This document shows positions 4,978-50,992 of a stretch of DNA of 64,000 bases, piece after piece. The position numbers and the translations under genes are program-made. The stretch is from Pecten maximus (lineage: Eukaryota), in contig NC_047021.1 of the NCBI RefSeq assembly GCF_902652985.1, positions 41,416,001 to 41,480,000 on the forward strand, given 5' to 3'. The first letter of the stretch is position 1, and each line of letters begins with the position of its first letter. A model generated the notes under the pieces. It did no database searches. It was not told where the DNA came from and was given only the letters and a program-made list of their open reading frames with translations.

Positions 4978-5044
4978 ATGCCTCGACGGACAGGCAGCGC
5001 CGGCATCTTTGCAATATCAATAGCACTAATGGTTTACCATACAG
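4978..5044 (+). CDS. Gene A exon 1, signal peptide MPRRTGSAGIFAISIALMVYHT
   Basis: ATG, basic n-region, hydrophobic h-region; donor ACAG|gtgtgt in phase 1 matches exon 2. Confidence 0.65.
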
Positions 5045-6166
5045 GTGTGTAGATAATCAATCACCTAGATTTCGTTTCACTTTTTTGTAAAACTACAATG
5101 GATGATTTTAAGTGATGAAATTTCGTATCCTCCCTGACAACAGATAAATATCAAAATAAAGCAAGACAAAGTTTATTTTTTTATCTATTTCATTTTCCCT
5201 TTTTTTGTGTGTAAATATCTAATGAAACACGAGGAAATTTTAAATAGTGAGGTAAATTCTGTGATATTAAGGGGACATTTTGATCGGTGAGACACATTTT
5301 GTGATGTAATAGAAAGACTCGATTACTTACACTGAAATTGAAAGTATAATGCTTTAGTGAGTCACATTTGGGATATCAAGTGGAGTTTCATATGAAATCC
5401 ACGGAGAAGACTATGGTTCGGTGGGGTAAAATTTTGTTTCTCAGTTTTGTCTGTATCATTTGTTTATATCTAACGTGTTTATTTTTACAGATGCTGCCGA
5501 TTCAGTTACACTGAGCGAACTAGTTTGTGACTCTCAGGTAAGAACCCCGTTTAGACACTGTCAGCTGATACAAAACATTGAAAAATTTAAACTTCTAAAT
5601 GTATGAAGGGTTCAAGTACAATATTCTTGCTTAAGAATGAAATAAAAAAGTTTCACAGTGCTTTTTCAAAATTTGAAATTACAAATTTTCTTTTATGAAC
5701 TTGAAATATTTTTTTTATTATATCGATTTCAGATTTACGATATAAAAGATGGTGACTCTTTGTTAATAAAATGGGATGGAACTGAACTCCCTAAGTACTG
5801 TCGCCTTGGATTCGAGGCTCCAGACACCAGTTCCTGGACATGTTTCAATATAGAAAAATTTCGTCTGTACAACTGTAAATTTTATATTGAAATATATAAA
5901 AATTTTGAGAAGTACTCATCAAAGGTAAGTAGTTTTAGCTCTAAAATCTTTTTTTTCTCGATGGCCTAAATATGTATTAGTCACTGTTTGTGTCATAGCA
6001 ACCAATTTAATTATCAAGGTTGGGTACTAATTTTAGCATCATGACATTACTACATGGTGACCCAAACTTGACAGATGAGGAAAATAAATAAATATTTTAT
6101 CAAGTTCAAAACTACATTATCAGAACAGGTAGATTTTAATGATTGGGTTTCGCACCAAATCTCATC

Positions 6167-6215
<49 letters not shown>

Positions 6216-9200
6216 CTACTCCCCACTTGAATTTTTTCTGCTCCATCAATGTATTGATAGTATCGGTAAAATCATAGTCGGTCTTGTTAAATGATCTTAA
6301 TATCTATTGTATCTTCTATTAAAACAATAATTAAATATTGTATATCATAATTGCAAATAATCTTATAGGGAAATGGCTTTAAATAAGAGCATACTCTTGT
6401 TGCCAAATCCCTAATTTCCAATTATTGTATATATTGACCCATGTATTGTATATACCATTGATAATAAAATACTGTTTAAACCAACCAATTTAATTTTCCG
6501 GATTTCATTGAAATATGATTTCCTTGAGACACACAAACCCCTATAGATTTCCTTAAAATGCCACCTACACACCTTGTATACTCTCTAAAGACATACTCTC
6601 TTAACCTGTTTACTGATTTCATTAAAACATATTCTAAAAAGCCACACTTCTGATGTTATTGAATCATATCCCAATTTCATTGCAACTTTCTCAAAATAAA
6701 ACCCCACTACTGACTTCATTAAAACTTCCTCTTAATAAATCCTCAACTACTAATTTCAATGAAACATTATGATACTCTCCAAACCACACTACTAATTCCG
6801 TTGAACATACTCTCCTCAAGTACATTACTGACTGCATTCAAACATACTCTCCAAACTACACAGGCTACTGTTGTTAATACCTAATCCAGAAAATAGATAG
6901 ATCACTATTACTATCATTCTGTTTGAATTTGACGCCCTGTGACAAAATTTGATCTGTTAATTCTTCCTCGGCAAAAATATTTTAAACAAAATATGTATAT
7001 ATATAATAAATGTGCAACGTTCGTTGCATTAAACAGTAACTGAACCGCGTTATCTAACATCCCACACTGCTGTTGACTATCTAATGTTTTTTACAGAGAT
7101 ATGACTGCAGTTCCACAGACATCGACGATGAGTACTGCTTACAATCCCAGAAGATAACCTACCTCAAGTTTACCTACAACCATACCGGAATCGCCTCGTT
7201 TAGTCCACATGTTAGACTCTCCGTCAGCGTTCAACATAAAGAGGCCGATGCCGTTGCTTCACCTGAAGGTATGTGAATTATAAATAAAGAGTGGCAGTAT
7301 TACTGGGTTACTCTCGACCACGATGTCTCAGATATCCACGATTCAAACCTTCACGATTTATTGCATGGAATGTCTTTTTGTCTTCGCTTTCCTGTGGTCT
7401 CAGTTCGTTCTGTTACAAAGCCAACATGGTTTTGTCCAAGATTTGCCACGATTTCCATCACTTCTACTTTAGTAATCTTATGGACGTTATGATACGCTTG
7501 GTCACGTTCTTTTCGGCCTTTTCGTTCATAAATTTAATTGAGCTTTCGCTTTCCTGCATTGATGGCCATGATTTAAACTAGATTACCATGCTTTACTTTT
7601 TCATTCGGTCCAGATATATGTGGGTTATAATTCGTTAAAACATATATTGCCCCTCTTTTGTTAAAAAAAAAAAGAAAAAAAAAGAGGGGTGGGGGGTGGG
7701 GGGTGGGGGTGGGAAGGTAATGAATCACCTCTTGCAGGCTAGTATCTCTAATGATATGGGACATTAATGAACAACGCTTATTATACATCACGTGTCCCCA
7801 TTTGAAGTTACGAGTTTCTAGCACTGGCTTCGTCCCTTGAAGCTTTTGATATAATTATCCTTATATCCTTATTGTATATTCTTGTGGAATCGTTGTGAAA
7901 CCTTAATGAATCGGTTTCTTAAAGTTAGGGATTGGGGATATACCTCTCTATATCAAACTGCATTAGAATCCTTGAAAACAACATTTTGTTGCAGTCTCAA
8001 CTATGTCTTTTATCCAAATTATTCATTCTTTTCCTTGTACTATTAAAGGAGGGGTATAGTCCTATCGGGATATTGTTTTCCACAAACGTGCAATTATAGA
8101 AATATTGATTATAAAGAATCCCAAACCGCTTTTGATCAATCTTGAACATCCGCTTCTGTCTCTGGTGTCAACATCTTTACACTGCCACACCATTCTATCT
8201 CCATTCTAAATTTAAAGATCGCATCCATGCTCTGATGACGATATAAATGATCATGGCGCTACAAGTCCAAACATATGAACACAAAATATTGTCGCGTAAT
8301 TAGTTAAATATATGACAAGGACTCAGACCCAGACTTCAACAGACTATTGGCATACCCATCAAACAATCTGTGTCCCTCTTTTGGCCGACTTATTTATCTT
8401 TTCATACGAGACTTATTATACTAAATAACTCATCGGAATAGGTACAGGAGACTAAGTCCTTCAATTTTACCTGTACAATTACCAATGATGTGTTATCGAA
8501 AAAAGCTATATTGACCATATTTATCAGATATATCCTGTATATTTTATAAATCAAGGATACTACAGTCGCTAACCTCGGTCTTGACTTACAATATAATCAA
8601 CAGGACCAGCTTACTGTTAAGCCGTATGATAAGTGACGATTCTTGCTTCATCTCTATTGATAATTTTCCATTTCTAGATAGTAACATCCCTGCATCCCCT
8701 ACATACAATTGGTTTTTTTTTTACATGTTCAAGTTCATTCGATATTCGAGGGATTTTGCTCTCTTTCATTATTTCCGTTATGTATATCACCTACTGCGGT
8801 AAAACCAAAAACAGAAGGTTTCGAGAGATGCTTGTTGATATACCTGGTGACACCCCTGTCACCAACACAGTTCCCATTTTAAGGATAAGACTTAAACCAA
8901 ATTCTACCTATAATTGTGTAGCTGAAGACACTTACCTTTCCACAACACCTAATCTTATTATTATTATTTTTCAATGGTATTCATGCAAGTATTTATGTTG
9001 TTTTGTATTGAGCCAGAAAAACGTATTCTTTTTCATTAGGACATTCTCTGTATGCCCTCCCCTAAATTAAGCGGAATTTCTTACGCTGGAGGATCTAGAA
9101 ATGTTAAGGTATGTTAGGCCCCATTACGTTCATTTACGTTTTACACGTTCCTTTACGCTCTCAAAAGATGTGGAATTGAATCGGCAGGATCGTGGCAAAA

Positions 9201-12200
9201 TTTTAGACAGGCAAAACGACCCTAACAATCGTCACAATTCCATAAAGTGTCCTCAAGATCACCAAGATTTCACCCCCAACGACGTCGTGGCCAAGTGTAA
9301 ACCAAGCATACTGATACTATATAGTTAGTAATATTTGCGGGGGAATTAGAGTTTGCTCTGTCAGCGGTCATTACTCACAATGCGAAAATAAATACTCCGC
9401 GAATATTTTACGACGAATGATTAATGTTTGTTGGAATATATAATTAAACACACAAACAGATGTACACATGTATGTCTCGCCGTGAACACCTTGTTTTTGC
9501 AGAATTTTAATGGGGTGGTATTGCGAAAAATTGGCTAACAGCGAACTAGTCCGACTTCATCAACCACGAAATATTGCGCCTCGGTTATGAATATTGAATT
9601 GATCATACCTCTCCTAGGTTTGAAGCCAAAAGAAGAACTAGACAACACGAGCCGTGTCTGATAGATGGGACGAAATCTTCTCAAGTTCAGTCCGAATACC
9701 AATCCTTCTTTTAGTAGGATTCAGATTCGTTTGCAGCAATTTAGATACATCTTTATCAACCATGTCTCATATTGCTACATATAGACAAAGTCATGTTCAA
9801 GTTGTAATTGTCGTTACGAAGTTATTTGAATCGCGTTGATCTGGAATCGTTTCGACAAGAAGTTAATAGCGGTGTTTAGTTTTGAGGAGAAGTGACGAAG
9901 GCGTTAAGCAGCGGTTTAGTGTACCAGGTACGCCTTCCATTGTCAATACTAATACACTGACCATGTTGTGATTTTTCCTCACTACACGACTCTTTGTGGT
10001 AGTTTTGTGCTCTCTTTAACTATTCTTTGCCCATCCTTGTATTTATCACCTGTAATAGATATTTGTCTTTCCCTATGGAAATCTTACCTCCTTCTCCCTT
10101 CACATTGTCTTTCCCTATGGAAATCTTACCTCCTTTCTCCTTCACATTGTCTTTCCCTATGGAAATCTTACCTCCTTTCCCCCTTCACATTGTCTTTCCC
10201 TATGGAAATCTTACCTCCTTCTCCCTTCACATGGTCTTTCCCTATGGAAATCTTACCTCCTTTCTCCTTCACATTGTCTTTCCCTATGGAAATCTTACCT
10301 CCTTTCCCCCTTCACATTGTCTTTCCCTATGGAAATCTTACCTCCTTCTCCCTTCACATTGTCTTTCCCTATGGAAATCTTACCTCCTTTCCCCCTTCAC
10401 ATTGTCTTTCCCTATGGAAATCTTACCTCCTTTCCCCTTCACATTGTCTTTCCCTATGGAAATCTTACCTCCTTCTCCCTTCACATTGTCTTTCCCCTAT
10501 GGAAATCTTACCTCCTTTCCCCTTCACATTGTCTTTCCCTATGGAAATCTTACCTCCTTTCTCCTTCACATTGTCTTTCCCTATGGAAATCTTACCTCCT
10601 TTCCCCCTTCACATTGTCTTTTCCTATGGAAATAACCTGCTTTCGCTCCTCATTTGTCTTTCCCTTCGGAAATCTTTCCTCACGCCCCTTCACTTTAAAG
10701 TAGACTTTATCTGGTGGAGGATATGTCGAGGCATGTTAAATCACTGTTTATGGGTTAAAACATTTTACATAATACTGGAGGTAGAAAATGTTCCTGACGT
10801 TGACGTTGAAGATAGCAAATGCCGACACTTCTTGACATAATATCATGTTTCGTCTCTGATGTTGTTACAGGAGCATATGATGTCCTTTTGTTTTTGTTTA
10901 ATGTCTTCTCTTTAAAGTTCTCTTTCATTTTCATTTTAATTATGATTTGTGTCCTCGGGCCCTGATGGCCATGATAAAATTTGTGGTATGCATTTCGCTG
11001 AAAAAAAAATAATAAAAAAAAAAACAATGTCAGCTAATCCGCCAAATCTCACTTTAAGATGTGTTGCTGAGCTCTCAATACACTGGATAATCTTACATGA
11101 TCCATTTGGTAAGATATATATTATGTGACCCCCCACCCCCAACCGAAAGTCAAAGTACAGCAACCCAACAGGAAATATTTTTTACGTAACTTCCTAGTAA
11201 AAATCTCCCCTGTTACAAGTCAACAGAGTGTGTCTTGTCATTGAAGATTTTGTTTTGTAGTGAGGTTGCATATTCAAAAGATTCCACTTGCACTGATTAT
11301 GACTGCTTGAAGCGAACAAAAAATATGATGTCAGTTGCGTGTAATTTTGTGGTGAAATGAAAATGAGGCATCGCCTTACACACTTCGCCGAAAGTACAGC
11401 GCTAGTTCAAGACTTTTCTCTCCGCTGGACTGCGCTTATTAAAACACATCTGTATTTTCGAAGCGAAAGCGAACGGATAATTGAAGCAGACATTCCTTTC
11501 TACCTAATTTGAGCGTTTTGATGATGAAGATGGTGGATATCAGAATGTTTACACGCATTGAATTTGACAAGAAACACAAATCATTTACGTTTCAAGGGGT
11601 ACACTTAGACTACTTACAAATTCTTAAGAACTATTGTAGTAAAATTATATTTTCTGTAGTTTCGGTTAAATACCTAGCAGGTTGTGTTAGTGTTAGGGTT
11701 GATATGGTCTCGTGTTTAATAGGCTGAGTAGATTTGGATTTCAAAGTGACTTTGGCTCAAATGCGTTTATAGCCATTCAAATTTTATTTCTTCTGATTTG
11801 CCCTTACAATGGCGTGAAATCTTGGCATGAAAAGATGCTCTTAGTCAGTATTGTTACCAGTCATGCCGATGTTTTACTTCCTTGTACCCAATAACGTTGA
11901 ACATATGAGTTCTTTTACCAAAGTGTATTATCCCCCTTTGTTTATTTTCAGTTTCGGAAATCACACGAAACATCTTGGCCATAGGTGTAGCGATAGGATT
12001 TATAGTATGTTTTGTCGCAGTGAAAAAGAGAGAACATTTAAAGAATTGCAAAGAATATATGGAATGTATAGCCTGCCTTCCATGCGCTTTATGTGAACTG
12101 ATATGCACGGCATGCCGCTCTTTAAAGAATAGATGTCGTGACTGTGTGACGTCAGTGGATATTGACTGCAGTCAGCCATTGGTTTGTTGTCAGCCTCGTT

Positions 12201-15200
12201 CTCAGGAACCAAATGCAAGAGACGCCCCCACACCCACCGTACACTCGCAAACAACAGAATTTGGAAATTATGTAGCAGGTAGGAATTTTGTGCTTATTAA
12301 TAATGATGATGATTAACATCCGCTGATTAAAAATAATTCAGAAACGGTATGCTAACGGTAACATTCCTTCAAGGCTTGACGCGCTGAACTTATTCGCTAG
12401 TATGATTTCATTTACAATAGTTTCTGTGCAATGTTTTCCAATTTCACCAATTTGAATACGCTAAAATAAATATGTTTGCAGTATGTCCCGATTGCCTCAG
12501 TATATATCGTTATGTTAAGGCTGCATTCGTTACAATCTTCCAGAATACACTGATACCCCATGTACAGGTCTGATGTGTTTACGAGAAAATCACCTTCACG
12601 ATACCACTGCATAGTCGGACATGTATTAACTATGTTCCAATTGATGTGTAAATGGATCATTGATATTTTATGAATGATAATTTCCCCAAAACGCTGAAAG
12701 AACAAAAGTTGATTTAAATTATCGTACTCCGACGGTGATTCTATTTTTAAAAATGTAAACCCGTGCAAAATGACGAGGCACAAAACACCAGGTGATCTGG
12801 ATGGGTAACCTTCCTATAAAATAATGTATGGTTCTGTCAAATTCATGTAGTGTCACGCCCTGAGAAATTCGTAACAACGGAATCCAAGGTTTATCAACGT
12901 ACATCGAGCACGTTGATATAGAAATACAATACATTGAACGTAAATTTCTAGGAAGGTCCCGAGGTCCAGCATAAATTCCCTCTATGGTTTCACTCAACCT
13001 AACATGACGATGGATTAGATTTATAAAAACGTATGTATATACATAGTTTCTTTTTAATACTCCCTTATTTTGTCCTATTTGTAATTCAGATTTCGATGAT
13101 ATAACGACTGAGGAATCAGCACATCCTTCAGCAGCCCCCACAGACAATGGATGGGCCCCTCCCCCTTACGTAGCTCCTCCCCCTGACGAGTCCGTTCCAG
13201 AAGCGCCACCTCCTTCATATTATGACGTCATCACAGGAAGTGTTAGTGTGTCTAAAGCATAATAGTCAGTATTATGCGTTTTTAACTTTAATTTGAAATA
13301 TGTTGGCTGCTTTAATAAACCTGAAATATTCTTGTTCTGCAAATGAACACAGTGCAAAATGACAGGTTTTCGACCATCGCTGAAGAAAATCAGAAACATG
13401 AAATATGATCCAGATATCAAATGAAATGGAGATCAATGCGTTGGGAAGTGTTGGCAAATATCATTTGCAGGTACATTCCAAAAATAAACATTATAATCAT
13501 AGGGCGCATGTACAATGTAAACTTTTCAGGGTTTCTTGTAGCGTTTATGTTGTACAAGATATCGTATTCTTGGTCTCCTTGGTTGTATTCATAAGATATT
13601 TGTTTCATTAATGTCTTTTTTATAAACTTATAATATTTTTTTTTATTATTTTAAAGGTTTTAGTATTTTATGTTCTTTTTGTATTTTTTTTTTTTTTCTT
13701 TTTTGGATTTTAATATTTTAATCATTCTTTAAAATAGTAAAAGAGATCTTGCTCCTGATGATATTATCTGTGTTTCTTTATTTATCCGTCCACGTCATCA
13801 ATCAACAAGCGGTTTGTATAATCATAAAACTTGACATCATTTAAATGTTTCATCCTGACATCACAAACGTGTGTAGCTAATATATATTCTAGTGTTGGCA
13901 TATAAATACTATATATATATATGTAAATAAATATGCAAAACTGGCAATTGCAGAAATGTGTGCAGATTTTACAATATTTTGTTAATCATATCAAATTAAC
14001 GGCATGCTTATTACTGTTCAACGAATATTTGATAGAAATCCATATAAAAATGAACATTCACAAAAAACATTCGCAAACTACTTTTTGTGTATCATCATTT
14101 CCGTGGTCCAGATTTGAACAAGTGATGAAAATAGTCCCGGCCAGAGGTCACCGCGTCAACCAATCAAAACGTTTTTAGAGTTTATTCAATGTATGCCAAA
14201 AACTGTTTGCTATTGTTATGGGAGTTGAATAATACCCACCTATTGTGGTAGAAACTAGATATACACAATGTGCTATTATGTATTATGTAAAATGTTATTT
14301 ATTGGAAATTTTGTTAATTATAAATTGAAAAGTTGTTGGTAAAGATGTACGTTTGATATGATTCCCACTATAAAAACAATGTTATTTGTTTTTAATAATG
14401 ATGATATGTGATTATGACAAAATTATATTGCTTTAATTGTTTTATGGTTTTGAACTCATTTAATAAACGAATATATCTCAAAACCACATTATATGACTTG
14501 ATATCTACAAAATGTGATATAGTTTATTATTCATTTCGTATCGTAAATTGAATTCATTTATAGTATTATTGTGTCAGTTTACAAATGTGTATGATTATAT
14601 CTTTTATATCACTGCTATGTTTAACTCAATCGAATTCAAATTAGACGTATTATCTGCTTCTCTGTGATACTCTACGATACAATGCAATAGTGCATCGCAC
14701 AATATCGTAGATAAGCGGAAATTACAAGTATAATTTTATTAGATTCTGTTTGACTCAGATTTTATATAACTATGTTTGTATTTTCTTAATCAAAATGAAT
14801 ATGTATTTTTGCAATTTATCTCTACTTAATTACTTCCATCACTTGTAAGATATATACCTTATTTATGAAACATTGTACAAAAGACCAATGGTATTAACAT
14901 CTTGCAATACATATTGCGAGCTAGATACAGTATCTAAGACTGATTTGTCCTTCTAAGACTTGTCAGTGCTACTGAAGCTGAAGATATTTGAGGCAACGAA
15001 AGATGCTCACTGCTCATTTATTATAACATTGTGAAACATGTGTTTAACATTTTGTCAACAATTGTTATGTTAAAAAATAAATAATGTTTGTCGATGTTGT
15101 CTTTCTAGTTTTGTTATGTATGTTAACGTCAACACGTTCAAAACGACATTTATTCTCATTCTCCCATGTTGTCTTTTTTTACATAAACAATGGATCGTTA

Positions 15201-18200
15201 AGATTCGACGAAGAATAATGGAAAGAAGGGAAAATGATGTTTATAATATCAGAAATAATCCAATACCTGCTGTTTATATTATCCGGAATCTTCGAATATC
15301 CGATGCTTATATTATCTGGATTTTCCAGCTCCTTGATGTTAATATTATTATGAATATTCAAATACCGGAAGTTTATAGCATAAGAGTAAATGATAGTTTT
15401 ACTATCCGGAATACTCTTAAACCCGATGTTTATAATATCCGGAATACTCTTAAACCCGATGTTTATAATATCTGGAATAGTTAATTGCCTGATGTTTATA
15501 CTATCCGGAATACTCAAAACATGATGTTTATATTATCCGGAATACTCAAATACATGATGTTTATATTATCCGGAATACTCAAATACATGATGTTTATATT
15601 ATCCGGAATACTCAAATACATGATGTTTATACTATCCGGAATACTCAAATACATGATGTTTATACTATCCGGAATACTCAAATACATGATGTTTATACTA
15701 TCCGGAATACTCAAATACATGATGTTTATAATATCCGTAATAGTCCTATGCTTGCTGTTTATACTTTCCAGAATACTCCAATACCTTGTGTTTGTAATAT
15801 CCCGAAAAGTCCAATTCTTGATGTGTTTCAAATTAACAATGGTATTTTGATTATTGCTTTATACCAGTTTTGAGAATAATGCAAACAATTCATGATAAAA
15901 GCACACGATTTTTGTTTACTCTCTGTTATTTTTTAATTGTTTCTTCAGACTTCTATACTTTTATCTAATCACTATCGCTGTTGTGTATTCAAATATAGGC
16001 TACTTTCCAAAAATAGTGTACACAGTGCAAAGCTAGCGATGTTGTGTCCGTTCCATAATCTACGACATTTTCAAATTAGAATTTACACCTGCCTATGAAT
16101 TTACGGTAACACTAAAACCAGTTATATCTATAATTTACCAATTATTTTGATATGGATAATTTCTAGAATAGAAGATTCTTTTTGAAATTGAATCTGAATG
16201 TATCAGTTTATTAACTACAGTAGCTATCGATCCGCGTTCAGACAAAATACCACAGAAGATTCTTTTTTAAATTGAATCCGAATGTATCAGTTTATTAACT
16301 ACAGTAGCTATCGATCCGCGTTCAGACAAAAACACGTATTTTATTTTTTGCTTGTTATTTACAAACATTGGCGATGACTACGCTCCATAACATCGTTATC
16401 AACAACCTATTCAGGTAATTATCTTTGAATTGTATTTGATGTTTTGATTGTATTTAACACAAATTTTGATATTCAATTACTGTAAACTAACTTATTTTCA
16501 CGACAACTTGATTTCGCGTTTTCAAGCCTAACCTTTTTTTTGCGGCGATTTAGAATGAAAATGTCCTACTGTATCTGAGATTGAAACTATTTTGCGGCAA
16601 TTAATTTTCGCGACTTTCAATCCCCCGCGAAATACGCGAATATTAATCGTACGCGAAAATAATTTGGTTTACAGTATTACGCATTCACTTTGTATTTCTT
16701 CAATGCAAAATCTCGCTGTACAACAGGCTGGCTATAAACTACCGAATTAGATGTATTATCTGAAATCATTGAACACTTATAATTTTAAAAGTCGAACCTT
16801 TTTATCTGGAAGTTAGTAGGCTTGTAAAGAATGAAAGTAAGCTCCCGAGTATTTAAGATAACATAGTGTATTACATTTTTTGTTTTTGTCCCAACAAATT
16901 AGAATTTTGACTTCGAGTTATCAGGGTTCGAGTCTAACTGGTCATAATTCCCTGCTAGAAGAGATATAAACATCCCATTGCCGGTTGTTAAGTAAAAGTA
17001 TCACATCATTTTTCAAAACAGCGTTTTTTATCTGATATTAGTCACACTTTCTCGAAATGTATCGATTAAAGATTGATAGTAAACGGTTTACTAAAACTGC
17101 TAAGTTGATTTACTAGATAGAAATGTGACAACCACAGAACAAACTAATAAAGCGAAATGATATACTATGTTAGGATTATTAGGGGAGTATCCTGCAATAG
17201 AATAGTGATAAGTTTGATGTAATTCACTTGAATAATTAATTTATTATTTTCGTTTTAATAATCTCTCTTTAATAGTTTGTTGCTCAGCGCTATAACTCGT
17301 ATAAATACTTGTATTCTTGTTTGCACTTGAACTGTAGCGCCTCCATTGAAAGCGAAAAAGTTGCATTCAACAAATGAATGTATCCATAACTTAACTTCAA
17401 TTACTCCACGGAGTCACAGCCGATACATATCTGTTGTAGAAAATGTAGCAAACATTGACTACCGGTGGAACACAGTGTAAATTAATTAAACTCAAAACAT
17501 CGTCACTAAACATATCTTAAAGACATATGATCTAAAATATATCCTCATAAAAATATCTTTCGTTTTGATTGGTGTAACTTTATAATTTGTAATAAGTAAC
17601 GTATGGAGGTTTCATTTACCTTGATATTACGATTTTTTAATGTTGAAAACCTGTAGATATTTATTAACGGTACGATAATAATTGGTAAGCGGAAACAATA
17701 GTCATTATCTCTTTATAGACAGTTTTTGAGATTGAAAATCAATACGATGTATATGTATTTTTCCAACTTGGGAGTACTTTCCTTGAAAACTGGACAGAAA
17801 TATTTTTCACATGAAAATCGTAGACAATATGACTTTAACAAAACAATTGTTTTACTTCCTTGCATTTTGTTTCCACTTGCAATTGATATGCTATCTTTTT
17901 ATAGATGAAATTATGTTTATCTTGTGGGTGGATAAATATACAATTGAAGATATTGAAAATAATAATAATGAAAAAAAATAATAATACGAAAAGGGGGGAT
18001 AACTGAAGAGGTTGTTTAAGTAAGCAAGAAGACACATGGGGTTGTTTGATTCACAACGCTGATTTGTTTGTATTTGCATCCAACTGTCAACAAATATATT
18101 TGTGTGGGTAACAGTCTGCTTTGCTTTGCAAGAATTACAAATGAATTATCATAATGAAGTGAGTATCATGATGAATTGATTATCATAATGAATGGATTAC

Positions 18201-21200
18201 ATAATGAATTGATTATCATAATCAATGGATTATCATATTGAATGGATTATCATAATGAATGAATTATCATAATGAATGGATTATCATAATGAATAGATAA
18301 CGATAATCATTTTCGGCCTTGACAAACGAATATTCTTATTTGAAAACTTTTGTTTTATATTAGTTTCAGGTTTCAATGTCCTTCCTATCATACTGATTCT
18401 TGGTGTTGTCGGAGGAGGCGGTGCCTTGATAAAACACAAGCACGGCTTGACGTGTTTACGCGAGACACTGGGAGCTTTATGGGAATGTCTGAATGATAGT
18501 GTGTGTTGTATCATAAAAGCTGTATCATGTGAATCGTCCAGAGCAGTACAGGAGGACACATCTAGAAACAGAACTGAACATACTGATATAGCCATTACGT
18601 TCGAACCTGGCGTGACATTGTCTCGTCACAACAGCATGCTTTCACTTGGTAAGTACAATAATAGCATATACATGTATGTATTCTTTTTTAATACTGCTTT
18701 CTCTTACAACAATTTATCTCAGTAAATTTATTGATAGAAATTATGAATCATATGATTTTGTATATATACACAGAGTTGTGTTCACGTAATTGCTGTTGCT
18801 GTAACCCCCCTTTCATGTTTCGAAAACATCAATACAATGCATTTTATCGAAGCCGTTAAAACTTAATGAGATGCGTTTATCTGCATATAAACAATATGAA
18901 AATCCAACAAAACCCAAAACCCCATATTTCACCATTGAGAGATAGTCCGAATTAATATCATATCATAGATCTGATTATGCATTGTTTACGTAATTAGTAG
19001 ACATTGTCTGATGTAAAAGATGCCTGCAACTGATGAAGAACCTAATTTTCATGATTACGAGAGATTCATATTTATGACGAGTACTGGGAAGTTTTATAAT
19101 CATCTTGACCTAATATTGAAACAATCGATGTGTTCTGCGTGTATTGCTATACCAGGAAGCCCTGTTGTTTGACCCTGGCTTTTCATTTTGAGTGCATCAC
19201 ATAATTTGGAGTTGACCTAGATTGAAATAGCAGGTGTCGTCGATGAAACGCTTATCCGTCCGAAACCCATGTCCGTTTTCCTCTTACAAAGCGATGTGTA
19301 TGTTATATTCATAGATGTATTTTGTTCACATCTTCTTCCTTTTATAAACGGTGGGATTATTTTGTGTGTAATATTTCTCAATAGTTGAATTCCGTTAGCA
19401 TGAATTTTCTTGCCTTCTAAACTATTGTCTCCTTCCACATTTTTCTTGAATGAAACTTTAACTTAATTGTTTTCATGTGCATGTCTTGAATATGAATCCT
19501 CAATACAAATTCTTTGTAAATGTCTCGTTTTTAATTACTTTACAGGCATTCTAGCGAGTGTGATACCAAACAATTCAAACAATAGATCACGTGCAAATGA
19601 CAATGCAACTGAGGACACGTCGAGAAACAGAACTGAAGAACCGTTTTTACCTTCTTCTGATACTGAATCTTACACGACTCTATCAGAAGACAATAGCCTT
19701 CTATCGCTAGGTATGTAAATGTTACAATTGTCACTCGGTTGATCAGTCAAACCAATATTTTCAATACTGTTTTTTTGTATTAATCTTTAAGTTGATTTTT
19801 CCTTAATAATTGTTTACTGGACGCCAAACAATACAACACCAAACCTTCACTCTTTAGAAGTATTGTATTATGATAGCAATTGACGAAAGCAATGTTCCAC
19901 TTCTGTCGAAACCAGGAAAAGATATGGATTTAGTTCAAATATTTTTCATGTAAATGTAACAAATATCTGATTAGTTTTGCTTTTGTATTTATCATTTCAT
20001 TTCTATTTCTATTTGCAGACATTGATGATGGGTTTACAGAGGAGCCCTTGGACCCTTCCACACCCCCTACCGATAATATATATGATCCACCTTCTTACGT
20101 TGTCCCTCTCCCTGATTCGATTGCAGCTCCTCGAACACTTGCTGTCAACGATATAGTTGATCCTCCTCCTTACGTCGCCCCGCCCTCACCCGAGGAACCG
20201 CCTCCGTCCTATTATGACGTAGTGACAATGAATAAATAGACTGATGAATTGACTATTTCATACATGTCAGCATATATTGTGTAATATCAAAATATAATTT
20301 ACTTAGTAATATTAGGTGTGAAAATGCGTGAAAAAGGTATGTGCTTTTAGTTAGTGAATTGAATAAAAAACTTAATGTTTCCTAAGTTAACTGCCATGTT
20401 TGATACTGAGAGGTAGATTCAAAAGGGGGAAATAAATTTGTAACATAACTTCAAATAAGACTGTTTCGCCGTTATTACTGAAATATCCAGATGAGAGATG
20501 CAGATCCTCTCTGACCTTTTGTTACTATAGGAAAGCGAAGTAGATATGTTTTCTGCCCAAATCTTAAAATGTGGTTAATCTCTCCTAAAAAATATTTTGT
20601 TTTTTTTGTTAGTTTGTTTATTTATCTGTCATTGTGGTATATAAATAATAAACTCTACAGTGTAAAGGTATATACATATGTGTAATTGTTTAAATGCATG
20701 TTAGGTATTAGTTATTTATTGATATTCCAGATAGAGTGCATCCATAATTGAAAAAAAACTCTCAGCAAATCAGAACTGAATCTGAAATGTGGAAATCTTC
20801 CATTAACTGATGCATACTACACTGATACAATTGACGATTTGTGTTGTTTATTAAAACGTGTTAAGACAATTTTTTTTTAAATTTCAACTATGTATTGTTG
20901 TATGAACATGCATTAATGGTGAATGGTATTGAAACTTCAATACTTTTTACGTATGAACTAATACGAGCGTATCTATCTTCGGATTGCAATATATTGCAAA
21001 TATTCATTTTTTTAAATTTAAATTAGACAAAAAATTTGAGTTGCCAATATGGCGTTCATTAAGTTGAACAATGTTTATAAGTTCCATGTATGAAATTTAT
21101 CTAGTTTTAAACCTTTTCTTTCTGGTGCTTTATCTGTAATATGGTGTTATGCTTTATACTTATACAATATAATGTGATTTTCCGCCAACAGAATATTCTA

Positions 21201-24200
21201 GTTTTGTCTGCGATAAAAATAAATCTTACAGTACCATTAAACATAATGTGATTTATTGTTCTTTTGGAAATCAAATGTTCTTATTCCTGAGACAATACGA
21301 ACATCTGTTCTCTAAGAATTTTGTTGATGTACTCGTTTACAACCACTCATTTCAACAACCAATAGACATGTTTATGGATTGGATTCTCGGAGGAATCATA
21401 ACATGTCTAAAAAACGTTTTGCATCTCCCGTGCAACGATACTCATTATATATACAATAATACCACTAATTACACAATCGATCATCAAAATTGTTTATTGT
21501 TATTTAGATATAAAAACAATTGATTGTTGTTTTGTCGACGCATTTTCCAACATGGCGCTTGGCATACTAACTTACTTTGAGCACCTGGATTTCCCTCGTA
21601 CATTTTTAGGGTATTTGTGCTTAGTCATATTGTGCTAGTTTTCCACTCGTTTTATCGATCTTTAGTTGAAATTCATTATTATTTGTTTTCGTTGATAAAG
21701 CCCTTTGTTTTGACTCCCGTATTTACAATGGCTTTGTTTCATTTTGGCATCCAAGTTATTGCGGTCCTTGTTTGGTGGCGTTGTTTTTTTTTTTCAGTTG
21801 GGTCGTTGTTTTTCCTTGAAATGTTTTGATATTTAGTTTTAGGCAAAAGGGAAACTCTTCGCCTTCTATTATATAACCCCGCAAGATGTCTTATTTTTAA
21901 ATTTTTACACCATTGCTTCATTTCTTGCGATATCTCTTCCCGAGTTTTTTTTTGAACACATTAAAACTATCATTATACTATCTATTCACCATTTCCCCTT
22001 ATCCTACTTTGTCTTTCCGTCACATTTAATACTAACTTTCCTTATATCGTTAAGAATGCGCCCTTTTAATAATACTATTGATTTTATAATGATTTCCTGA
22101 TATATAGGGAAAAACTTTCCGTCAATATATACAGCCGACTAACACTGATATTAACAGAGCTGAAATCTTACCCCCGAAACGTCTGGCTTTTATTTTAGAA
22201 GGACGTTTAATACATTACTGTAATTATATAAGATATATTGAATTAGATATATTTCCCTATCAAAATATCTGTTTTTAGCCTAACTTAATCACACTGGTTT
22301 CATTGACAAATTGCATTTTCTCGTAGTCCAAAGTCACGAATGTTTTATTTTCAATAGAATAGGCTGCAGGCACTATGTACGGGTAGGGGGTATAAAAGAC
22401 ATGGAAAATCCAGATAAATCCAATGGAAAAAGAAGTGTGAACAAAATAGATTTTCAAAAATTGATCAACTGACGCCATTTTGGTAAACAATATTGCCATT
22501 CGAAAGAGTAGTCTTTATGCATTTAGAATATATAGTAGATGATTGATTTAGCTATGCATTTAACAAATTTCTGTCTCTCTGTACGTGTTCGCATTTTACC
22601 TTTGATTTATAAAGTTTGAGTAAAAAAAGTTTTATATGTATATCGATATTCTCTGCTTGATTTTAATACATTCAGTCAGACAGGATTGTCCTGTTAAGTT
22701 AATGTCATGTTTCCATTTATAATTATTTTACAATGATGTGCATGTCGTTTCTCTTGTTTGCTTGTAAATCTTATACTAATGGTATTATGTAGAGGATGTT
22801 AATTAGTTCTTTTGTAAATGTTTGTAATTATATTTTGAACTGTATTTTTCAATGGCATGCAAACAATGAGAATTTCTCACGGAGTTGACCCATAGGTGCC
22901 ATTAGTGTGGAGTGGCGTAGTGAATCAACCATTGGTATCCGACGATGGGTATTCTTGACATACTCATTGAATAGGTTTGAGGGCTTGGATTCAATCGGAT
23001 ATATTTTATCATTACGGCTTAACTATTTTCAAAGGAAATTGCGTTATCATTGTGTCCTACGTGTTTACATTAATAAATACTATGTGAAGTTTTCATTTCT
23101 AAATATTCCCCTTCACGTTTTCAGAATTTAATGTCGGACACGTTTTCGGGATCGTATCTGGCAGTTTGGTTATATGTGCTTGTGCTGGAATTCTGAAAGC
23201 AATTTGTGAAAGGTTTTTCGAAAACTGTAGAGAATCTTGTAATGAAGTGTGTGGATGTATTCCCTATATCCTGTGCGGCATAAGGGAATGCATAGCAGGA
23301 TGTTTCGGTTGTGAAAAGAAAGAGGATGCTGATCCTGAAGAGAATACAGAAACTGTTGTGACACAGGAACCACTGAGAGTATATACTATAAATGATTCTG
23401 TGGTGAATCGGACCAGTGCTGTCAGTTTGGACACAATAGACTCTCTAGGTAAATCTAATCATCCTCGAAAGTCAGTTCGTAGTAAAGTCATAAATATAAT
23501 AATATCACAACATCCACATTATAGTTTCTTAATCATAAAGTATATCTGTTTGTATACAAATATTCTCGTTTATTCAAAACAATTACCAGAGACTTAGTTT
23601 ATAGAGGTCCCCATTATTACATTTTCGATTAATGATATACTGAATTGCAATTACAAAGTTATTTTATATCAAGATATTAAACAAAATATAAACTGTTCTG
23701 TCGTTTTTTGTATTGCAGAGGAAAGAGATTCTTTGATAGGAGGCAACGGGCGGAATGAGGATAATGAGTGGGATCCACCTGATTACGTTCCCCCTATGCC
23801 CCCTACTGCTCCCCCTGCTGACTCATTGTCGGATTTATCGCCTCATTACGTAGCCCCGTACCCTAGTGCGCCTCGTTCTGACTCATTATCGGAAGCACCC
23901 CCTCCTTACGTTGCCCCGTCGCCAAGTGCGCGTCGTTCTGACTCAATATCGGACGCACCACCTCCTTACGTTGCCCCGTCGCCAAGTGCGTCTCGTTCTG
24001 ACTCATTATCGGAAGCACCACCTCCTTCCTATTATGATTACGTGACCGATAATTTTTCGTAAGAAATTGGACCTTTATAAAAGAATCACGCTAAAAATTG
24101 ATACGACTAGTTATTGAACGTTTTATGATAAAAATGTCACGCAATAAAGAAAAGAAAACTTTAGTGGTACAGACAGCATAGCTGTAAGCATTAACTTTGA

Positions 24201-27200: not shown

Positions 27201-28934
27201 AACAAACATCAACAATGTATGGTAGACCAGCCAGAATGTTTACGTTGCTTTCATCTCGCTATATTTACCATTGTATGGCACTGCCACTATATAACCCTAC
27301 CAATTCAGTTGCGAGTTCACCAGCTTATTTACTGCCAACTGAAATTTAAATTTGAAAATTTCAAAAAAAAATCTAGTGTTTAATACTTTAAAATTGGTGA
27401 AAAAAAATCAACGTTTCAGTGTATTCGAAAACAGGAGGGGATTGTTGCACGTTAAAACAAATAATATATTAATTTGGAATTAATCATAGATGTTTAATGT
27501 ATTTGTTATATTAGGAAATGTTTATCAAAATCTTTTTGAAACTCCATTGAAATGAACAGTTAAGAAAATATAACGAAACGTGTATTAATTCCGTAAACAA
27601 TGCTAAATTAATCATTTTAAGAATAAAAATGTGTTTCATCAAATCTGCAGAAGGACGAACCAGATGAATGAGTTTTATCACAACATTCTCAGTATTAGAA
27701 TCCAGAGCAGAACGGTTGTTGCTCCTTATATGGAGACAATTTCACCATGATGACATAAATGATGTTACATACATGTTCATTCCAAAACATTCGCTTCAAT
27801 CACATAATCAGAAAAACCTCCACATTTAAGTCCGTGATTTTATTTGAATGTGCGAAATATATTTAGTAGAATGCACGGCATTATCAACAGGGTGTGTGTT
27901 TCATAAAAATATCTTTACACAGGGAAATATAGAATATTTAGTGTATGATATGAGATTTATACATTCCAGTACAAGAACGCATAATGCTTTTAAAATAACT
28001 ATAGATTTTTTTTTCAGCAACTCTTATTGGCAACATCCTTGGAGGTCTTGTTGGACTTATATTTTTTGGCTGTGTCATTGCGGTCTTTTGGAATGTTGTG
28101 AAAAGATGCTACGGAGACCTTGGCATGCCCTGTCGTGAAGCATGTGAAGGTATTTGCATTTTCCTGGGAGGTGTATGCAATCAAATATCAGATCTATTGG
28201 ACTGTGGATGTGTTACTAGACGACGTGCAGAACCGACAACATACAGAGACGATACAAGACACGAAACAACAATATTTTCAGCTCAACCGCAACCACAGGA
28301 ACAGGAAATAACTATTACGATTGCCACTTCCTCAAATCTGTCACGTACAGTCAGTCTGGACTCGTTATATACTCTAGGTAAGTCGAATGGAGGCGGCTTC
28401 ATTCGCGACAATCATATCCATAATGATATTCCAGTGTTCGCAACAAATGGTAGCTTGGTTAGTAGAATAAACCTTGTATAAAGTATCATTTTTTACACCC
28501 TGAAGTTATTACATTTTTAATAAATTACTGATAAATAAGATGTCTGTGATGCAAGATGGCCTCAAATCCTATGAAATAAACTTAGTTTAGGTTTTAAAGC
28601 ATATTAAGCATGAACCAATTCTATTTCGGGGTTTTCAATGTATGATTCCCTTTATCCAATTAATAGGTAAAACTTTACCCCCTACATGTACCCCCACCTA
28701 AATCCATGAAATTTCGGAGGCAAGGCTCCTTCATATTTTTTTTTTTTTATTGTTTATGCCTTTTCATTTTTGCTTACAGATTCCCTTCCAATGGAACTTG
28801 TGCCTTCTGCGCCCCCTGCTGACAATAACTCGGCTATCCTTCCTTACCCTGATCGTGATCCACCTCTGCCGGATTTACCACCTCCTTCTTACTATGACGT
28901 CGTAACAGAAAGCAAACGTCAGTACAGCTTATAA
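4978..28934 (+). CDS. Gene A: type I membrane protein with CUB-like ectodomain and four tandem TM/Cys-rich/PPxY 3' cassettes (predicted isoforms 325, 380, 381, 330 aa if all join exon 4)
   Basis: Hand-built exon chain with canonical GT-AG sites and consistent phases: 4978-5044, 5491-5537, 5733-5924, 7097-7268, then one of four cassettes; all reading frames open. Confidence 0.7.
5491..5537 (+). CDS. Gene A exon 2 ((D)AADSVTLSELVCDSQ)
   Basis: Acceptor ttttacag, donor CAG|gtaaga, phase 1 to 0. Confidence 0.75.
5733..5924 (+). CDS. Gene A exon 3, N-terminal half of CUB-like domain (IYDIKDGDSLLIKWDG...YCRLGF...WTCFNIEKFRLYNCKFYIEIYK)
   Basis: Acceptor tttcag, donor AAG|gtaagt, 64 codons, phase 0-0; alternating hydrophobic pattern and Cys spacing resemble CUB domains. 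Confidence 0.85.
6170..6213. repeat. (CT)n microsatellite
   Basis: Direct reading. Confidence 0.95.
6480..6880. repeat. Degenerate ~40-bp tandem repeat (ACTACTGATTTCATTGAAACATACTCTC-like)
   Basis: Recurring TTTCATT(G/A)AA and CATACTCTC words. Confidence 0.55.
7097..7268 (+). CDS. Gene A exon 4, C-terminal half of CUB-like domain and stalk (RYDCSSTDIDDEYCLQ...LKFTYNHT...VRLSVSVQHKEADAVASPE)
   Basis: Acceptor ttttacag, donor GAAG|gtatgt, phase 0 to 1; N-glycosylation sequon NHT; homologous to the - strand exon 60236-60104. Confidence 0.85.
8150..8850 (+). mobile_element. Decayed Penelope-like retroelement reverse transcriptase fragment
   Basis: Frameshifted peptides QQTIGIP, PLLADLFIFSYE, SFNFT..NDVLS, IKDTT, DNFPFLDSNIPASPTY, FIRYSR resemble the PLE-type RT motifs (GIPMGTNCAPLLADLFL, YIDD, NFPFLxSNIP) as I recall them. 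Confidence 0.75.
10060..10695. repeat. 42/43-bp minisatellite (CACATTGTCTTTCCCTATGGAAATCTTACCTCCTTTCCCCTT), about 14 copies
   Basis: CACATTGT at 10101 and 10143; source of spurious ORFs 9968-10840, 10027-10635, 10317-10703. Confidence 0.95.
11952..12278 (+). CDS. Cassette 1 exon a: TM (ILAIGVAIGFIVCFVAV), KKR stop-transfer, Cys-rich segment
   Basis: Acceptor ttttcag, donor GCAG|gtagga, phase 1-1, open frame. Confidence 0.85.
13090..13262 (+). CDS. Cassette 1 terminal exon: DFDDITTEESAHPSAAPTDNGWAPPPYVAPPPDESVPEAPPPSYYDVITGSVSVSKA*
   Basis: Acceptor ttcag in phase 1; 2 PPxY; AATAAA at 13314-13319. Confidence 0.85.
15225..15830. repeat. 30-bp minisatellite (ATCCGGAATACTCAAATACATGATGTTTAT-type), degenerate at both edges
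   Basis: Direct periodicity; explains the four repetitive ORFs at 15116-15850. Confidence 0.9.
16170..16332. repeat. Recent ~84-bp tandem duplication
   Basis: AGAAGATTCTTTTT...GATCCGCGTTCAGACAAAA at 16170 and 16254. Confidence 0.9.
16478..16676. mobile_element. MITE with terminal inverted repeats (TA)CTGTAAAC...GTTTACAG(TA)
   Basis: TIRs TACTGTAAACTAACTTATTTTCACG / CGCGAAAATAATTTGGTTTACAGTA, internal TTTCGCG/CGCGAAA repeats, probable TA target duplication. Confidence 0.75.
18140..18310. repeat. 17-bp minisatellite (AATGAATGGATTATCAT) about 60 bp upstream of the cassette 2 acceptor
   Basis: Direct periodicity. Confidence 0.85.
18370..18648 (+). CDS. Cassette 2 exon a: TM (VLPIILILGVVGGGGALI), KHKH, Cys-containing segment
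   Basis: Acceptor tttcag (an in-frame alternative tag lies 6 nt upstream), donor TTG|gtaagt, phase 1-1. Confidence 0.8.
19546..19710 (+). CDS. Cassette 2 exon b (partial duplicate of the 3' half of exon a)
   Basis: Acceptor tttacag, donor TAG|gtatgt, phase 1-1; shares EDTSRNRTE and TLSxxNSxLSL with exon a. Confidence 0.8.
20019..20239 (+). CDS. Cassette 2 terminal exon with 3 PPxY motifs, ends EEPPPSYYDVVTMNK*
   Basis: Acceptor tttgcag in phase 1; paralogous to 13090-13262; AATAAA at 20362-20367. Confidence 0.85.
21250..21790 (+). mobile_element. Highly decayed Penelope-like fragment (RT remnant plus 3' GAGCACCTG-type region)
   Basis: FQQPIDMFM resembles FQQxIGIPMG; ACTTACTTTGAGCACCTGGATTT resembles similar segments at ~55040 and ~45530. 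Confidence 0.4.
23125..23448 (+). CDS. Cassette 3 exon a: TM (VFGIVSGSLVICACAGIL), Cys-rich segment, ends VSLDTIDSL
   Basis: Acceptor ttttcag, donor TAG|gtaaat, phase 1-1. Confidence 0.85.
23719..24062 (+). CDS. Cassette 3 terminal exon: 4 PPxY, PTAP and PSAP, internal 60-bp (20-aa) repeat, ends PPPSYYDYVTDNFS*
   Basis: Acceptor ttgcag in phase 1; AATAAA at 24143-24148. Confidence 0.85.
26300..26550 (+). mobile_element. Degenerate CORE-type tRNA SINE
   Basis: Aligns by eye with 52598-52886 (GATCCGAGG..GTTCGA head, TTGTGTCTTTAGGGAAGA..AATTGCTC core, GGCTGTT..GGGGCGATAAAC tail). Confidence 0.65.
28018..28377 (+). CDS. Cassette 4 exon a: TM (ILGGLVGLIFFGCVIAVFWNVV), KR, Cys-rich segment, ends VSLDSLYTL
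   Basis: Acceptor tttttcag, donor TAG|gtaagt, phase 1-1; CREACEGIC parallels cassette 3 CRESCNEVC. Confidence 0.85.
28780..28934 (+). CDS. Cassette 4 terminal exon: DSLPMELVPSAPPADNNSAILPYPDRDPPLPDLPPPSYYDVVTESKRQYSL*
   Basis: Acceptor ttacag in phase 1; PSAP and 1 PPxY; AATAAA at 28934-28939 overlaps the stop. Confidence 0.85.
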
Positions 28935-50877: not shown

Positions 50878-50992
50878 TCAATCCGCCAAAGCAAGATTTA
50901 TTAGATAAAATGTCGTTTTGTCGCGTTTTTTTTTACCGCGACAACACGCCAATATGACATTTCGAACACGCAAATCAACGTGCATGGAATGG
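50878..50992 (-). pseudogene. Possible rhodopsin-family GPCR TM1-TM2 fragment
   Basis: IPCTLICVF[frameshift]NVILACCRGKKKRDKTTFYLINLALAD* resembles the class A GNxxV..NLAxAD signature. Confidence 0.4.

What the first reader, a model, noticed from the sequence alone, without database searches (positions are those of the whole stretch)
4978..28934. One ectodomain, four alternative TM+cytoplasmic cassettes: a candidate 3'-variable receptor gene
Seen: exons 1-4 encode a signal peptide and CUB-like domain and end at a phase-1 donor (7268) with no TM. Four intact paralogous cassettes follow (acceptors at 11952, 18370, 23125, 28018). Each starts in phase 1 a few residues before a TM helix, has no in-frame Met before the TM, and ends in its own stop followed by an AATAAA (weak evidence in AT-rich DNA). 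I found no copy of exons 2-4 in the 2.9-5.1 kb spacers. The cassettes are strongly diverged yet free of stops and frameshifts, which suggests purifying selection. Inference: mutually exclusive alternative last-exon splicing joins one ligand-binding domain to four different membrane/trafficking modules. Constant-5'/variable-3' arrays are known (Drosophila lola, mod(mdg4), PGRP-LC), but I do not know of one that swaps whole TM+PPxY tails in molluscs. Automatic annotation would probably split or truncate this locus.
Basis: partly seen in the sequence, partly recalled or inferred. Interest (0 to 1): 0.9.

Follow-up and report, generated by a model that had tools for sequence, protein, structure and literature searches.

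The report
Scallop receptor gene with four tails

Summary
Four constant exons (4978-7268) encode a signal peptide and a domain whose predicted fold is CUB, and end at a phase-1 donor. Four downstream exon sets follow. Each starts in phase 1 just before a membrane helix and ends in its own stop.

The public RefSeq models of Pecten maximus LOC117330863 already list four isoforms (X4, X1, X2, X3). They equal constant exons + c1, c2, c3 or c4 exactly.

RNA contigs from two studies carry the last 30 letters of exon 4 joined to 18364 (c2), and one joined to 23125 (c3). The c1 and c4 junctions rest on RefSeq models only.

No hidden ectodomain exons lie in the spacers.

- c2 uses acceptor 18364, not 18370.
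- c2 has three exons and is a fusion of two ancestral cassettes.
- Real 3'UTRs run well past the first AATAAA.
- Automatic annotation did not split this locus.

The same layout occurs in the neighbouring paralogue LOC117330862 and in Argopecten and Mizuhopecten, so the array is old. It is a new member of the known class of 3'-variable (alternative last exon) genes. The function of the tails (PPxY, cysteine-rich) is inferred only.

The parts
4978..5044 (+). Constant exon 1: start codon and hydrophobic signal-like segment (coding part only; 5'UTR not mapped)
   Evidence: equals residues 1-22 of P0001/P0014/P0015/P0016
5491..5537 (+). Constant exon 2 (DAADSVTLSELVCDSQ)
   Evidence: AG/GT flanks
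5733..5924 (+). Constant exon 3: first half of the CUB-fold ectodomain (64 aa)
7097..7268 (+). Constant exon 4: second half of the ectodomain. Its phase-1 donor at 7268 is the common 5' splice site
11952..12278 (+). Cassette c1, TM + Cys-rich exon (RefSeq isoform X4)
   Evidence: junction to 7268 not seen in reads here
13090..13262 (+). Cassette c1, PPxY tail exon with stop
18364..18648 (+). Cassette c2, TM exon (ancestral c2a type); acceptor 18364
   Evidence: exon-4 overhang in X1 and X3, and joint 18648>19546
19546..19710 (+). Cassette c2, symmetric middle exon (165 nt). It is the remnant of the c2b TM exon that lost its TM helix
   Evidence: (joints in X1, X3, X11)
20019..20963 (+). Cassette c2, tail exon (CDS ends 20239) and 3'UTR seen in an RNA contig to at least 20963
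23125..23448 (+). Cassette c3, TM + Cys-rich exon (isoform X2)
   Evidence: exon-4 overhang in X1, and joint 23448>23719 in X1 and X3
23719..24062 (+). Cassette c3, tail exon with a 60-nt tandem repeat that multiplies PPPY units, then the stop
28018..28377 (+). Cassette c4, TM + Cys-rich exon (isoform X3)
   Evidence: junction not seen in reads here; orthologue in Argopecten
28780..28934 (+). Cassette c4, tail exon with stop

Best explanation
This is one gene, Pecten maximus LOC117330863, with a 3'-variable region. Four constant exons encode a signal peptide and a single CUB-fold ectodomain. Their last 5' splice site (7268, phase 1) is joined to one of four tandem terminal cassettes, each with its own stop and 3'UTR. 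Each cassette supplies a transmembrane helix, a cysteine-rich juxtamembrane stretch, an S-x-SLD-x-x-x-SL/LG motif and a proline-rich tail. The tails carry 1-4 PPxY motifs and end in PPPSYYD(V/Y)(V/I)T. The result is four type-I membrane proteins with the same outside and different anchors and insides.

Shown here: the exon structure, the four public isoform models, and the 7268>18364 and 7268>23125 junctions in RNA.

Inferred:
- The choice is ordinary alternative-last-exon selection. One common donor competes for four acceptors, coupled to terminal-exon definition and polyadenylation.
- The tails differ in palmitoylation and in recruitment of NEDD4-type WW-domain ligases, and hence in sorting and turnover of the receptor.

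The array arose by tandem duplication of cassettes before the Pecten/Argopecten split. In Pecten the block ecto..c3 was duplicated once more, giving the neighbouring gene LOC117330862.
For: Isoforms: searches returned XP_033745293.1 (X3) and three more isoforms (X1, X2, X4) of the same LOC. All are identical over the first 159 residues. The window exons reproduce all four proteins exactly with GT-AG introns.

RNA: contigs of run X1 start with 28 letters that occur once in the genome, at window 7239-7266, and continue at 18364 and at 23125. Run X3, from another study, shows the same for 18364. Joints 18648>19546 and 19710>20019 appear in X1 and X3, and the first also in X11, a recorded RNA library. 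Joint 23448>23719 appears in X1 and X3. Both overhangs stop 30 letters into exon 4. That is what a k=31 assembly graph does at a branch point.

No ectodomain copies lie in the spacers.

The ectodomain model (pLDDT 80-89) matches CUB structures: 1spp TM 0.74, E 5e-7, plus TSG-6, neuropilin, Kremen and C1r.

The same layout is seen in the paralogue LOC117330862, in Argopecten irradians (ecto + c1 + c2a + c2b + c4-like, all open) and in Mizuhopecten.

Single-cassette paralogues at C7:43.46 Mb show that exon-4-type donor to TM exon is the family's normal join.

Against: The 7268>11952 and 7268>28018 junctions were not seen in reads here. Run X1 may be the data NCBI used, so it is not fully independent of the models. 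dN/dS of cassettes between the two Pecten paralogues is 0.7-0.9, against 0.18-0.32 for ectodomain exons (short alignments). Constraint on the tails is therefore weak, or the tails are diversifying. c2 is a patched cassette, and the paralogue's c1' is decayed (frameshifted tail, no TM exon), so not every cassette need be functional. Nothing here shows protein, membrane topology, WW binding or isoform-specific regulation. A crude search for docking/selector RNA pairings found nothing above shuffles.
Confidence: 0.88

Rival explanations
1. Ordinary tandem array of separate small membrane-protein genes. Each cassette has its own promoter and 5' exons, and only c1 belongs to the ectodomain gene.
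For: Cassettes are paralogous and each has a stop and a poly(A) signal. A broken copy of an ectodomain exon exists in the neighbouring gene's intron, so whole-gene duplication followed by decay is conceivable as the origin.
Against: RNA contigs join exon 4 directly to c2 and c3. No contig joint from the 20.3-23.1 kb spacer enters c3. There is no Met before the TM in any cassette. No ectodomain-like exon lies in any spacer by tBLASTn or HMM. RefSeq models all four as isoforms of one gene.
Confidence: 0.03
2. The splice forms are real but only some matter. The array is in birth-and-death flux, and one or more cassettes (for example the patched c2) are tolerated by-products without a distinct function.
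For: Cassette dN/dS is 0.7-0.9 between the paralogous Pecten genes. c2 is a fusion after a 3.5-kb deletion and a 138-nt loss of a TM helix. The paralogue's c1' is decayed. Cassette number differs between genes and species.
Against: Each cassette type (c1, c2a, c2b, c4) is kept open, with TM helix and terminal PPPSYYDV motif, in Argopecten as in Pecten. c1 tails are 73-77% identical across genera, as high as the ectodomain. c2 and c3 contigs are among the better covered pieces in two studies (depth is not a measure of expression).
Confidence: 0.25
3. The c1 and/or c4 isoforms are artefacts of model building (chained evidence), and only c2 and c3 are truly joined to exon 4.
For: These two junctions were not checked in reads here. 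The Argopecten model P0003 shows that pipelines can mis-chain this locus: three cassettes concatenated into 625 aa.
Against: c1 is the proximal acceptor with a strong pyrimidine tract. Ecto+c1 is also the form modelled in Mizuhopecten (P0010/P0013). c4 has a conserved orthologue at the distal end of the Argopecten array with no ectodomain exon of its own.
Confidence: 0.07

Closest known systems
3'-variable-region genes of Drosophila (PGRP-LC, CG42235, Pip; also lola and mod(mdg4) from my own knowledge)
   Same: Constant 5' exons with one common 5' splice site, followed by a tandem cluster of paralogous terminal cassettes of which one is used per mRNA. This is the class described in PMC6191721, which notes that a simple scanning/competition model suffices for most such clusters.
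   Different: Here the variable part is the TM helix plus the whole cytoplasmic tail of a type-I protein. In PGRP-LC it is a ligand-binding ectodomain, and in lola it is zinc fingers. No docking/selector pairings were found. There is no sign of trans-splicing. The phylum is Mollusca.
Dscam1 exon 17.1/17.2 (alternative transmembrane exons) and alternative endodomain exons
   Same: One ectodomain is combined with alternative TM segments and tails (PMC3364881).
   Different: In Dscam the alternatives are internal mutually exclusive exons followed by shared 3' exons. Here they are whole terminal cassettes with their own stops and 3'UTRs.
NCAM120/140/180 and, from my own knowledge, Aplysia apCAM and Drosophila FasII/Neuroglian isoforms
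   Same: Alternative 3' exons give the same ectodomain different membrane anchors or tails. Juxtamembrane cysteines of the NCAM TM isoforms are palmitoylated (PMC4810158), an analogy for the Cys-rich stretch here.
   Different: Those alternatives are not paralogous copies of one cassette, and those ectodomains are Ig/FnIII, not CUB.
Single-pass CUB receptors (neuropilin, Kremen, NETO, CDCP1, small CUB/LDLa proteins of molluscs and arthropods)
   Same: Predicted CUB fold next to a single TM helix.
   Different: No Pfam CUB match. There is one CUB only, and the tails are unrelated. By sequence the family was found only in scallops (12 hits in 1.84 billion, the real ones all Pectinidae).
PPxY membrane adaptors/cargo of NEDD4-family ligases (NDFIP1/2, Commissureless, LRAD3, PMEPA1; from my own knowledge)
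   Same: Short cytosolic tails with multiple PPxY motifs.
   Different: There is no sequence homology, and binding is untested.

Membership tests
3'-variable / alternative-last-exon gene | Isoforms share the 5' exons and one common 5' splice site | tested here: met
   Four public isoforms are identical over residues 1-159, and all are reproduced from 7268.
3'-variable / alternative-last-exon gene | Several tandem terminal cassettes, each with its own stop and 3' end | tested here: met
   Stops confirmed. AATAAA/ATTAAA hexamers lie after each stop. c2 and c3 3'UTRs are seen in RNA contigs. Cleavage sites are not mapped.
3'-variable / alternative-last-exon gene | Junctions from the common donor to each cassette seen in RNA | tested here: inconclusive
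   Seen for c2 (two studies) and c3 (one run). c1 and c4 rest on RefSeq models only.
3'-variable genes with competing RNA pairings (PGRP-LC type) | Docking site after the constant exon that is complementary to selector sequences before each cassette | tested here: inconclusive
   Best ungapped stems score 30-37, against shuffle maxima of 34-36. The only one above the maximum is a G-run/C-run. The duplex-energy attempt was unusable. This was a crude test with no cross-species alignment.
CUB domain | About 110-residue beta-sandwich fold of spermadhesin/C1r type | tested here: met
   The AlphaFold model has pLDDT 80-89 over residues 30-150. Foldseek top hits are all CUB: 1spp_B E 5e-7 with TM 0.74, plus 2wno, neuropilin, Kremen and C1r CUB2.
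CUB domain | Match to the Pfam CUB profile (PF00431) | tested here: not met
   No Pfam hit for single exons or whole isoforms at E up to 1-10. UniRef nevertheless names the Mizuhopecten orthologue 'CUB domain-containing protein'.
CUB domain | Conserved cysteine pairs | tested here: inconclusive
   C35, C61 and C75 are invariant in 8 family members. Other Cys are conserved in most. Disulfide pairing was not examined.
PPxY cargo/adaptors of NEDD4-type ligases | PPxY motifs in the cytosolic part | tested here: met
   c1 has 2, c2 has 3, c3 has 4, c4 has 1. All lie after the TM helix.
PPxY cargo/adaptors of NEDD4-type ligases | Binding to WW domains and ubiquitin-dependent sorting | not testable with these tools
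   Needs a pull-down or trafficking assay.

The most novel reading that the evidence does not exclude
A scallop-wide, long-conserved switch in which one CUB ectodomain is routed, cell type by cell type, to four or five different anchor/tail modules. The modules differ in palmitoylatable cysteines and carry graded numbers of PPxY motifs, so the same ligand signal gets different residence times or destinations. Since c4 lies outside the duplicated block, the neighbouring gene LOC117330862 might also reach into this gene's cassettes by read-through splicing.
Probability: 0.3. Interest if true: 0.55.

Novelty: new member of a known kind. Interest (0 to 1): 0.38.

Why it matters
It is a clean, conserved example outside arthropods of a 3'-variable gene. 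Paralogous terminal cassettes swap the whole membrane anchor and cytoplasmic tail of a receptor while the ligand-binding part stays fixed. Several features make it a usable natural system for asking how tail modules (PPxY number, juxtamembrane cysteines) set receptor trafficking, and how alternative-last-exon arrays grow and decay:
- The array is duplicated as a block within Pecten.
- One cassette is patched from two ancestral ones.
- One cassette of the neighbouring gene has decayed.

It also flags a likely mis-model in Argopecten, where three cassettes are chained into one protein. The practical weight is limited. The gene is uncharacterised, the family seems confined to scallops, and RefSeq already lists the isoforms.

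Tried and rejected
- Pfam on single exons and on whole isoforms: nothing.
- Low-complexity hits P0004, P0006, P0007 and P0009 from the representative search: discarded as composition artefacts.
- tBLASTn and family-HMM search for hidden ectodomain exons in the spacers: none.
- Protein Atlas on the c1 tail alone: no usable hit.
- Search for homologues of the c1 cassette: only this gene and its Mizuhopecten orthologue.
- Search for short protein fragments that might carry the exon4-c1 or exon4-c4 junction: blank. Given the length filter this says little.
- RNAduplex over long introns: the first attempt timed out. The second gave energies no better than shuffles and is not meaningful at that length.
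- Ungapped stem search for docking/selector pairs: at chance level.
- The look-up of sequencing runs labelled no holder as recorded RNA. The spliced contigs themselves show that X1 and X3 contain RNA.
- Within-genome dN/dS does not support strong purifying selection on the cassettes. I rely on cross-genus retention instead.
Exons were searched by reference, and afterwards the public protein ids were used. Only a local script joined window exons, to test equality with the public proteins.
Full report
**What the window is.** The window is G000:C7:41416001-41480000 of a 918-Mb assembly. Proteins encoded here are identical to RefSeq proteins of Pecten maximus, so the organism is the king scallop.

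**Checking the observation: constant exons.** Reading the three forward frames and fitting to the public proteins gives four constant coding exons: 4978-5044, 5491-5537, 5733-5924 and 7097-7268.
- All have GT-AG borders.
- Together they encode 159 residues.
- The donor after 7268 splits a codon after its first base (phase 1).
- There is no hydrophobic helix after the N-terminal signal-like segment.

**Checking the observation: cassettes.** Each opens a phase-1 frame that reaches a strongly hydrophobic 19-residue window within about ten residues. None has a Met before that helix.

Each TM exon ends in a phase-1 GT donor after a conserved ...SL(G) motif. It is followed 0.3-0.9 kb later by a proline-rich tail exon with its own stop. 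So every cassette has at least two exons.

**No hidden ectodomain exons.** tBLASTn of the ectodomain exons against the window finds only the constant exons. So does a profile HMM built from seven family members and run with all filters off against every six-frame open piece. Nothing is found in the spacers between 7.3 and 28 kb.

**Public annotation already has the four forms.** I searched exon by exon, by reference. The 64-residue exon 5733-5924, searched against 1.84 billion representatives, found twelve proteins. The true hits were all from scallops.

The best hit, P0001, is XP_033745293.1, 'uncharacterized protein LOC117330863 isoform X3 [Pecten maximus]'. It reads constant exons + c4.

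A second search, restricted to the shared N-terminal region of that public protein, returned isoforms X1 (P0014), X2 (P0015) and X4 (P0016) of the same gene. A local script showed that constant exons plus the following sets reproduce X4, X1, X2 and X3 letter for letter:
- c1 (11952-12278, 13090-13262) gives X4.
- c2 (18364-18648, 19546-19710, 20019-20239) gives X1.
- c3 (23125-23448, 23719-24062) gives X2.
- c4 (28018-28377, 28780-28934) gives X3.

The joined sequences were used only for this equality test. No joined model of mine went to a search or fold tool.

The prediction that automatic annotation would split or truncate the locus is wrong for this species.

**RNA evidence.** Only one read-laying run of at most 6000 letters was allowed. 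I chose 18200-24199 for two reasons. A graph-based contig of a distal isoform should be anchored in its cassette and carry only about 30 letters of exon 4. This stretch also holds two cassettes and a whole spacer. One search shows the following.
- In run X1, a 1425-letter contig covers 18362-18647, 19545-19708 and 20017-20963. It has a 28-letter overhang before 18362.
- A second X1 contig covers 23123-23308 with the same 28-letter overhang.
- That overhang occurs once in the 918-Mb genome, at window 7239-7266. This is the end of exon 4 minus its last AG, which is ambiguous with the acceptor's AG.
- These contigs are therefore the junctions 7268>18364 and 7268>23125.
- Run X3, from a different study, shows the exon-4 overhang at 18362 as well, with a 6-letter in-frame difference.
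- Joints 18648>19546 and 19710>20019 are in X1 and X3, and the first also in X11, a recorded RNA-Seq library.
- Joint 23448>23719 is in X1 and X3.
- Both overhangs stop 30 letters into exon 4. That is what a k=31 graph does where several paths diverge, and it fits co-expression of several isoforms in one sample.
- No joint enters c3 from the 20.3-23.1 kb spacer.

The refuting scenario 'only 7268>11952 exists' is thus excluded. The junctions to c1 and c4 were not examined in reads. A search for short protein fragments carrying them was blank, which says little.

**What the parts are.**
- *Ectodomain.* It has no Pfam match. An AlphaFold model built on an eight-member family alignment has pLDDT 80-89 over the ectodomain. 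Its best structural matches are all CUB domains: spermadhesin 1spp TM 0.74 and E 5e-7, then TSG-6, neuropilin, Kremen and C1r CUB2. The Atlas look-alikes are mollusc clusters without names, followed by CUB proteins. 'CUB-like' therefore holds at the level of predicted fold, not of sequence profile.
- *Variable parts.* Each holds a TM helix, 5-12 cysteines in the next 70 residues, a serine/leucine motif at the exon end, and a tail with PPxY motifs. c1 has 2, c2 has 3, c3 has 4 and c4 has 1. All end in PPPSYYD(V/Y)(V/I)T.
- *c3 repeat.* The c3 tail contains a 60-nt tandem repeat (23818-24027) that multiplies the PPPY unit.
- *Function.* The tails probably recruit NEDD4-type WW ligases, and the cysteines are probably palmitoylated, as in NCAM TM isoforms (PMC4810158). 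Both points are inference from motifs only.

**Evolution: the neighbouring paralogue.** The 40 kb upstream of the window holds a paralogous gene, LOC117330862. It is collinear with this one at 70-80% nucleotide identity through exons and introns. It runs ecto', a decayed c1', c2a', c2b', c3'.
- The decayed c1' has no TM exon and a frameshifted tail. A broken copy of an ectodomain exon sits in its place.
- Public isoforms join ecto' to c2a' (P0002) and to c3' (P0017).

**Evolution: c2 is a fusion.** The comparison shows that the window's c2 is a fusion of two ancestral cassettes.
- The c2a TM exon is kept.
- The c2a tail and about 3.5 kb of sequence are gone.
- The c2b TM exon has lost 138 nt, in frame, that encode its helix and cysteines. 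It now serves as a symmetric internal exon (19546-19710) before the c2b tail.

**Evolution: c4 and other genera.** c4 has no counterpart in the upstream block, so the duplication spanned ecto..c3.
- In Argopecten irradians the orthologous locus has one ectodomain followed by c1, c2a, c2b and a c4 orthologue. All are open, each with a TM helix and its own stop, and there are no extra ectodomain exons.
- The RefSeq model there (P0003, 625 aa) chains three cassettes into one protein, which is probably an artefact.
- Mizuhopecten has ecto + c1 + a c2-like cassette within one gene range.

The array therefore predates the split of these genera.

**Evolution: selection.** Between the two Pecten paralogues, dN/dS is 0.18-0.32 for the large ectodomain exons but 0.7-0.9 for cassette exons (short alignments). 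The better argument is retention of each cassette type across genera, with c1 tails 73-77% identical.

**Mechanism.** The simplest account is standard for 3' tandem clusters (PMC6191721, discussion). One common donor is paired with one of several acceptors. Recognition of a terminal cassette is coupled to use of its poly(A) site, and skipped cassettes are removed as intron. I looked for docking/selector RNA pairings of the PGRP-LC kind and found none above shuffled controls. The test was crude. The AATAAA hexamers at or near the stops are not the only 3' ends. The c2 contig runs 0.7 kb past the stop, and the c3 contig leaves the stretch.

**Comparison and verdict.** The locus works like the 3'-variable genes of insects (PGRP-LC, lola). 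In what is swapped, it is like the alternative TM exons of Dscam (PMC3364881) or the anchor/tail isoforms of NCAM-type molecules. It differs in that whole paralogous TM-plus-tail terminal cassettes are exchanged on a CUB receptor, in a mollusc.

I found no paper on it, but the isoforms are in RefSeq. I rate it a new member of a known kind. It is of moderate interest: real, conserved and neat, but not surprising in principle, and the gene's function is unknown.

Noticed in passing
L018:8765-8960 (G000:C7:41394765-41394960), 21 kb upstream of the window: Broken duplicate of the 5733-type ectodomain exon (frameshift and a TGA, dN/dS about 1). It sits in the intron of the neighbouring gene LOC117330862, where its c1 TM exon should be. 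That gene's c1' tail exon is frameshifted too.
   Followed up: partly
window 7247-7252: The run X3 contig lacks six letters (GATGCC) of exon 4 just before the donor. This is an in-frame two-codon difference, probably an allele.
   Followed up: no
window 23818-24027: A 60-nt tandem repeat (3.5 copies) inside the c3 tail exon multiplies a PPPYVAPSPSA..SDSLSE unit. The paralogue's c3' has a different repeated unit, so PPxY number changes by intra-exon repeats.
   Followed up: partly
window 35265-35435 (-) and G000:C7:41482226-41482408 (-): Marginal matches to the family's ectodomain: HMM E 0.018 for the exon-4 type, and E 0.16 for the exon-3 type just beyond the window's end. Possibly another diverged family member on the minus strand.
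   Followed up: no
L027:10001-31022 (Argopecten irradians, XP_069142165.1): This public model chains ecto + c1 + c2a + c2b into one 625-aa protein with three TM segments, by skipping each cassette's stop. It is likely a mis-model of an alternative-last-exon gene. A fourth, c4-like cassette lies downstream at 34292-35933.
   Followed up: partly
G000:C7:43460647-43463397 (-) and 43473116-43480237 (+): Single-cassette paralogues (for example LOC117330924, P0008). P0008 ends in ETSV, which looks like a PDZ-binding end, rather than in PPPSYYDV.
   Followed up: no
window 21263-22620: Unspliced, low-depth RNA contigs of run X1 in the c2-c3 spacer. They could be pre-mRNA, a long c2 3'UTR or unrelated transcripts.
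   Followed up: no
window 10063-10681, 15390-15824, 50991-52427: Long tandem repeats: 42-nt units in the exon4-c1 intron, 33-nt units in the c1-c2 spacer, and 68 copies of a 21-nt G+C-rich unit at 51-52.4 kb.
   Followed up: no
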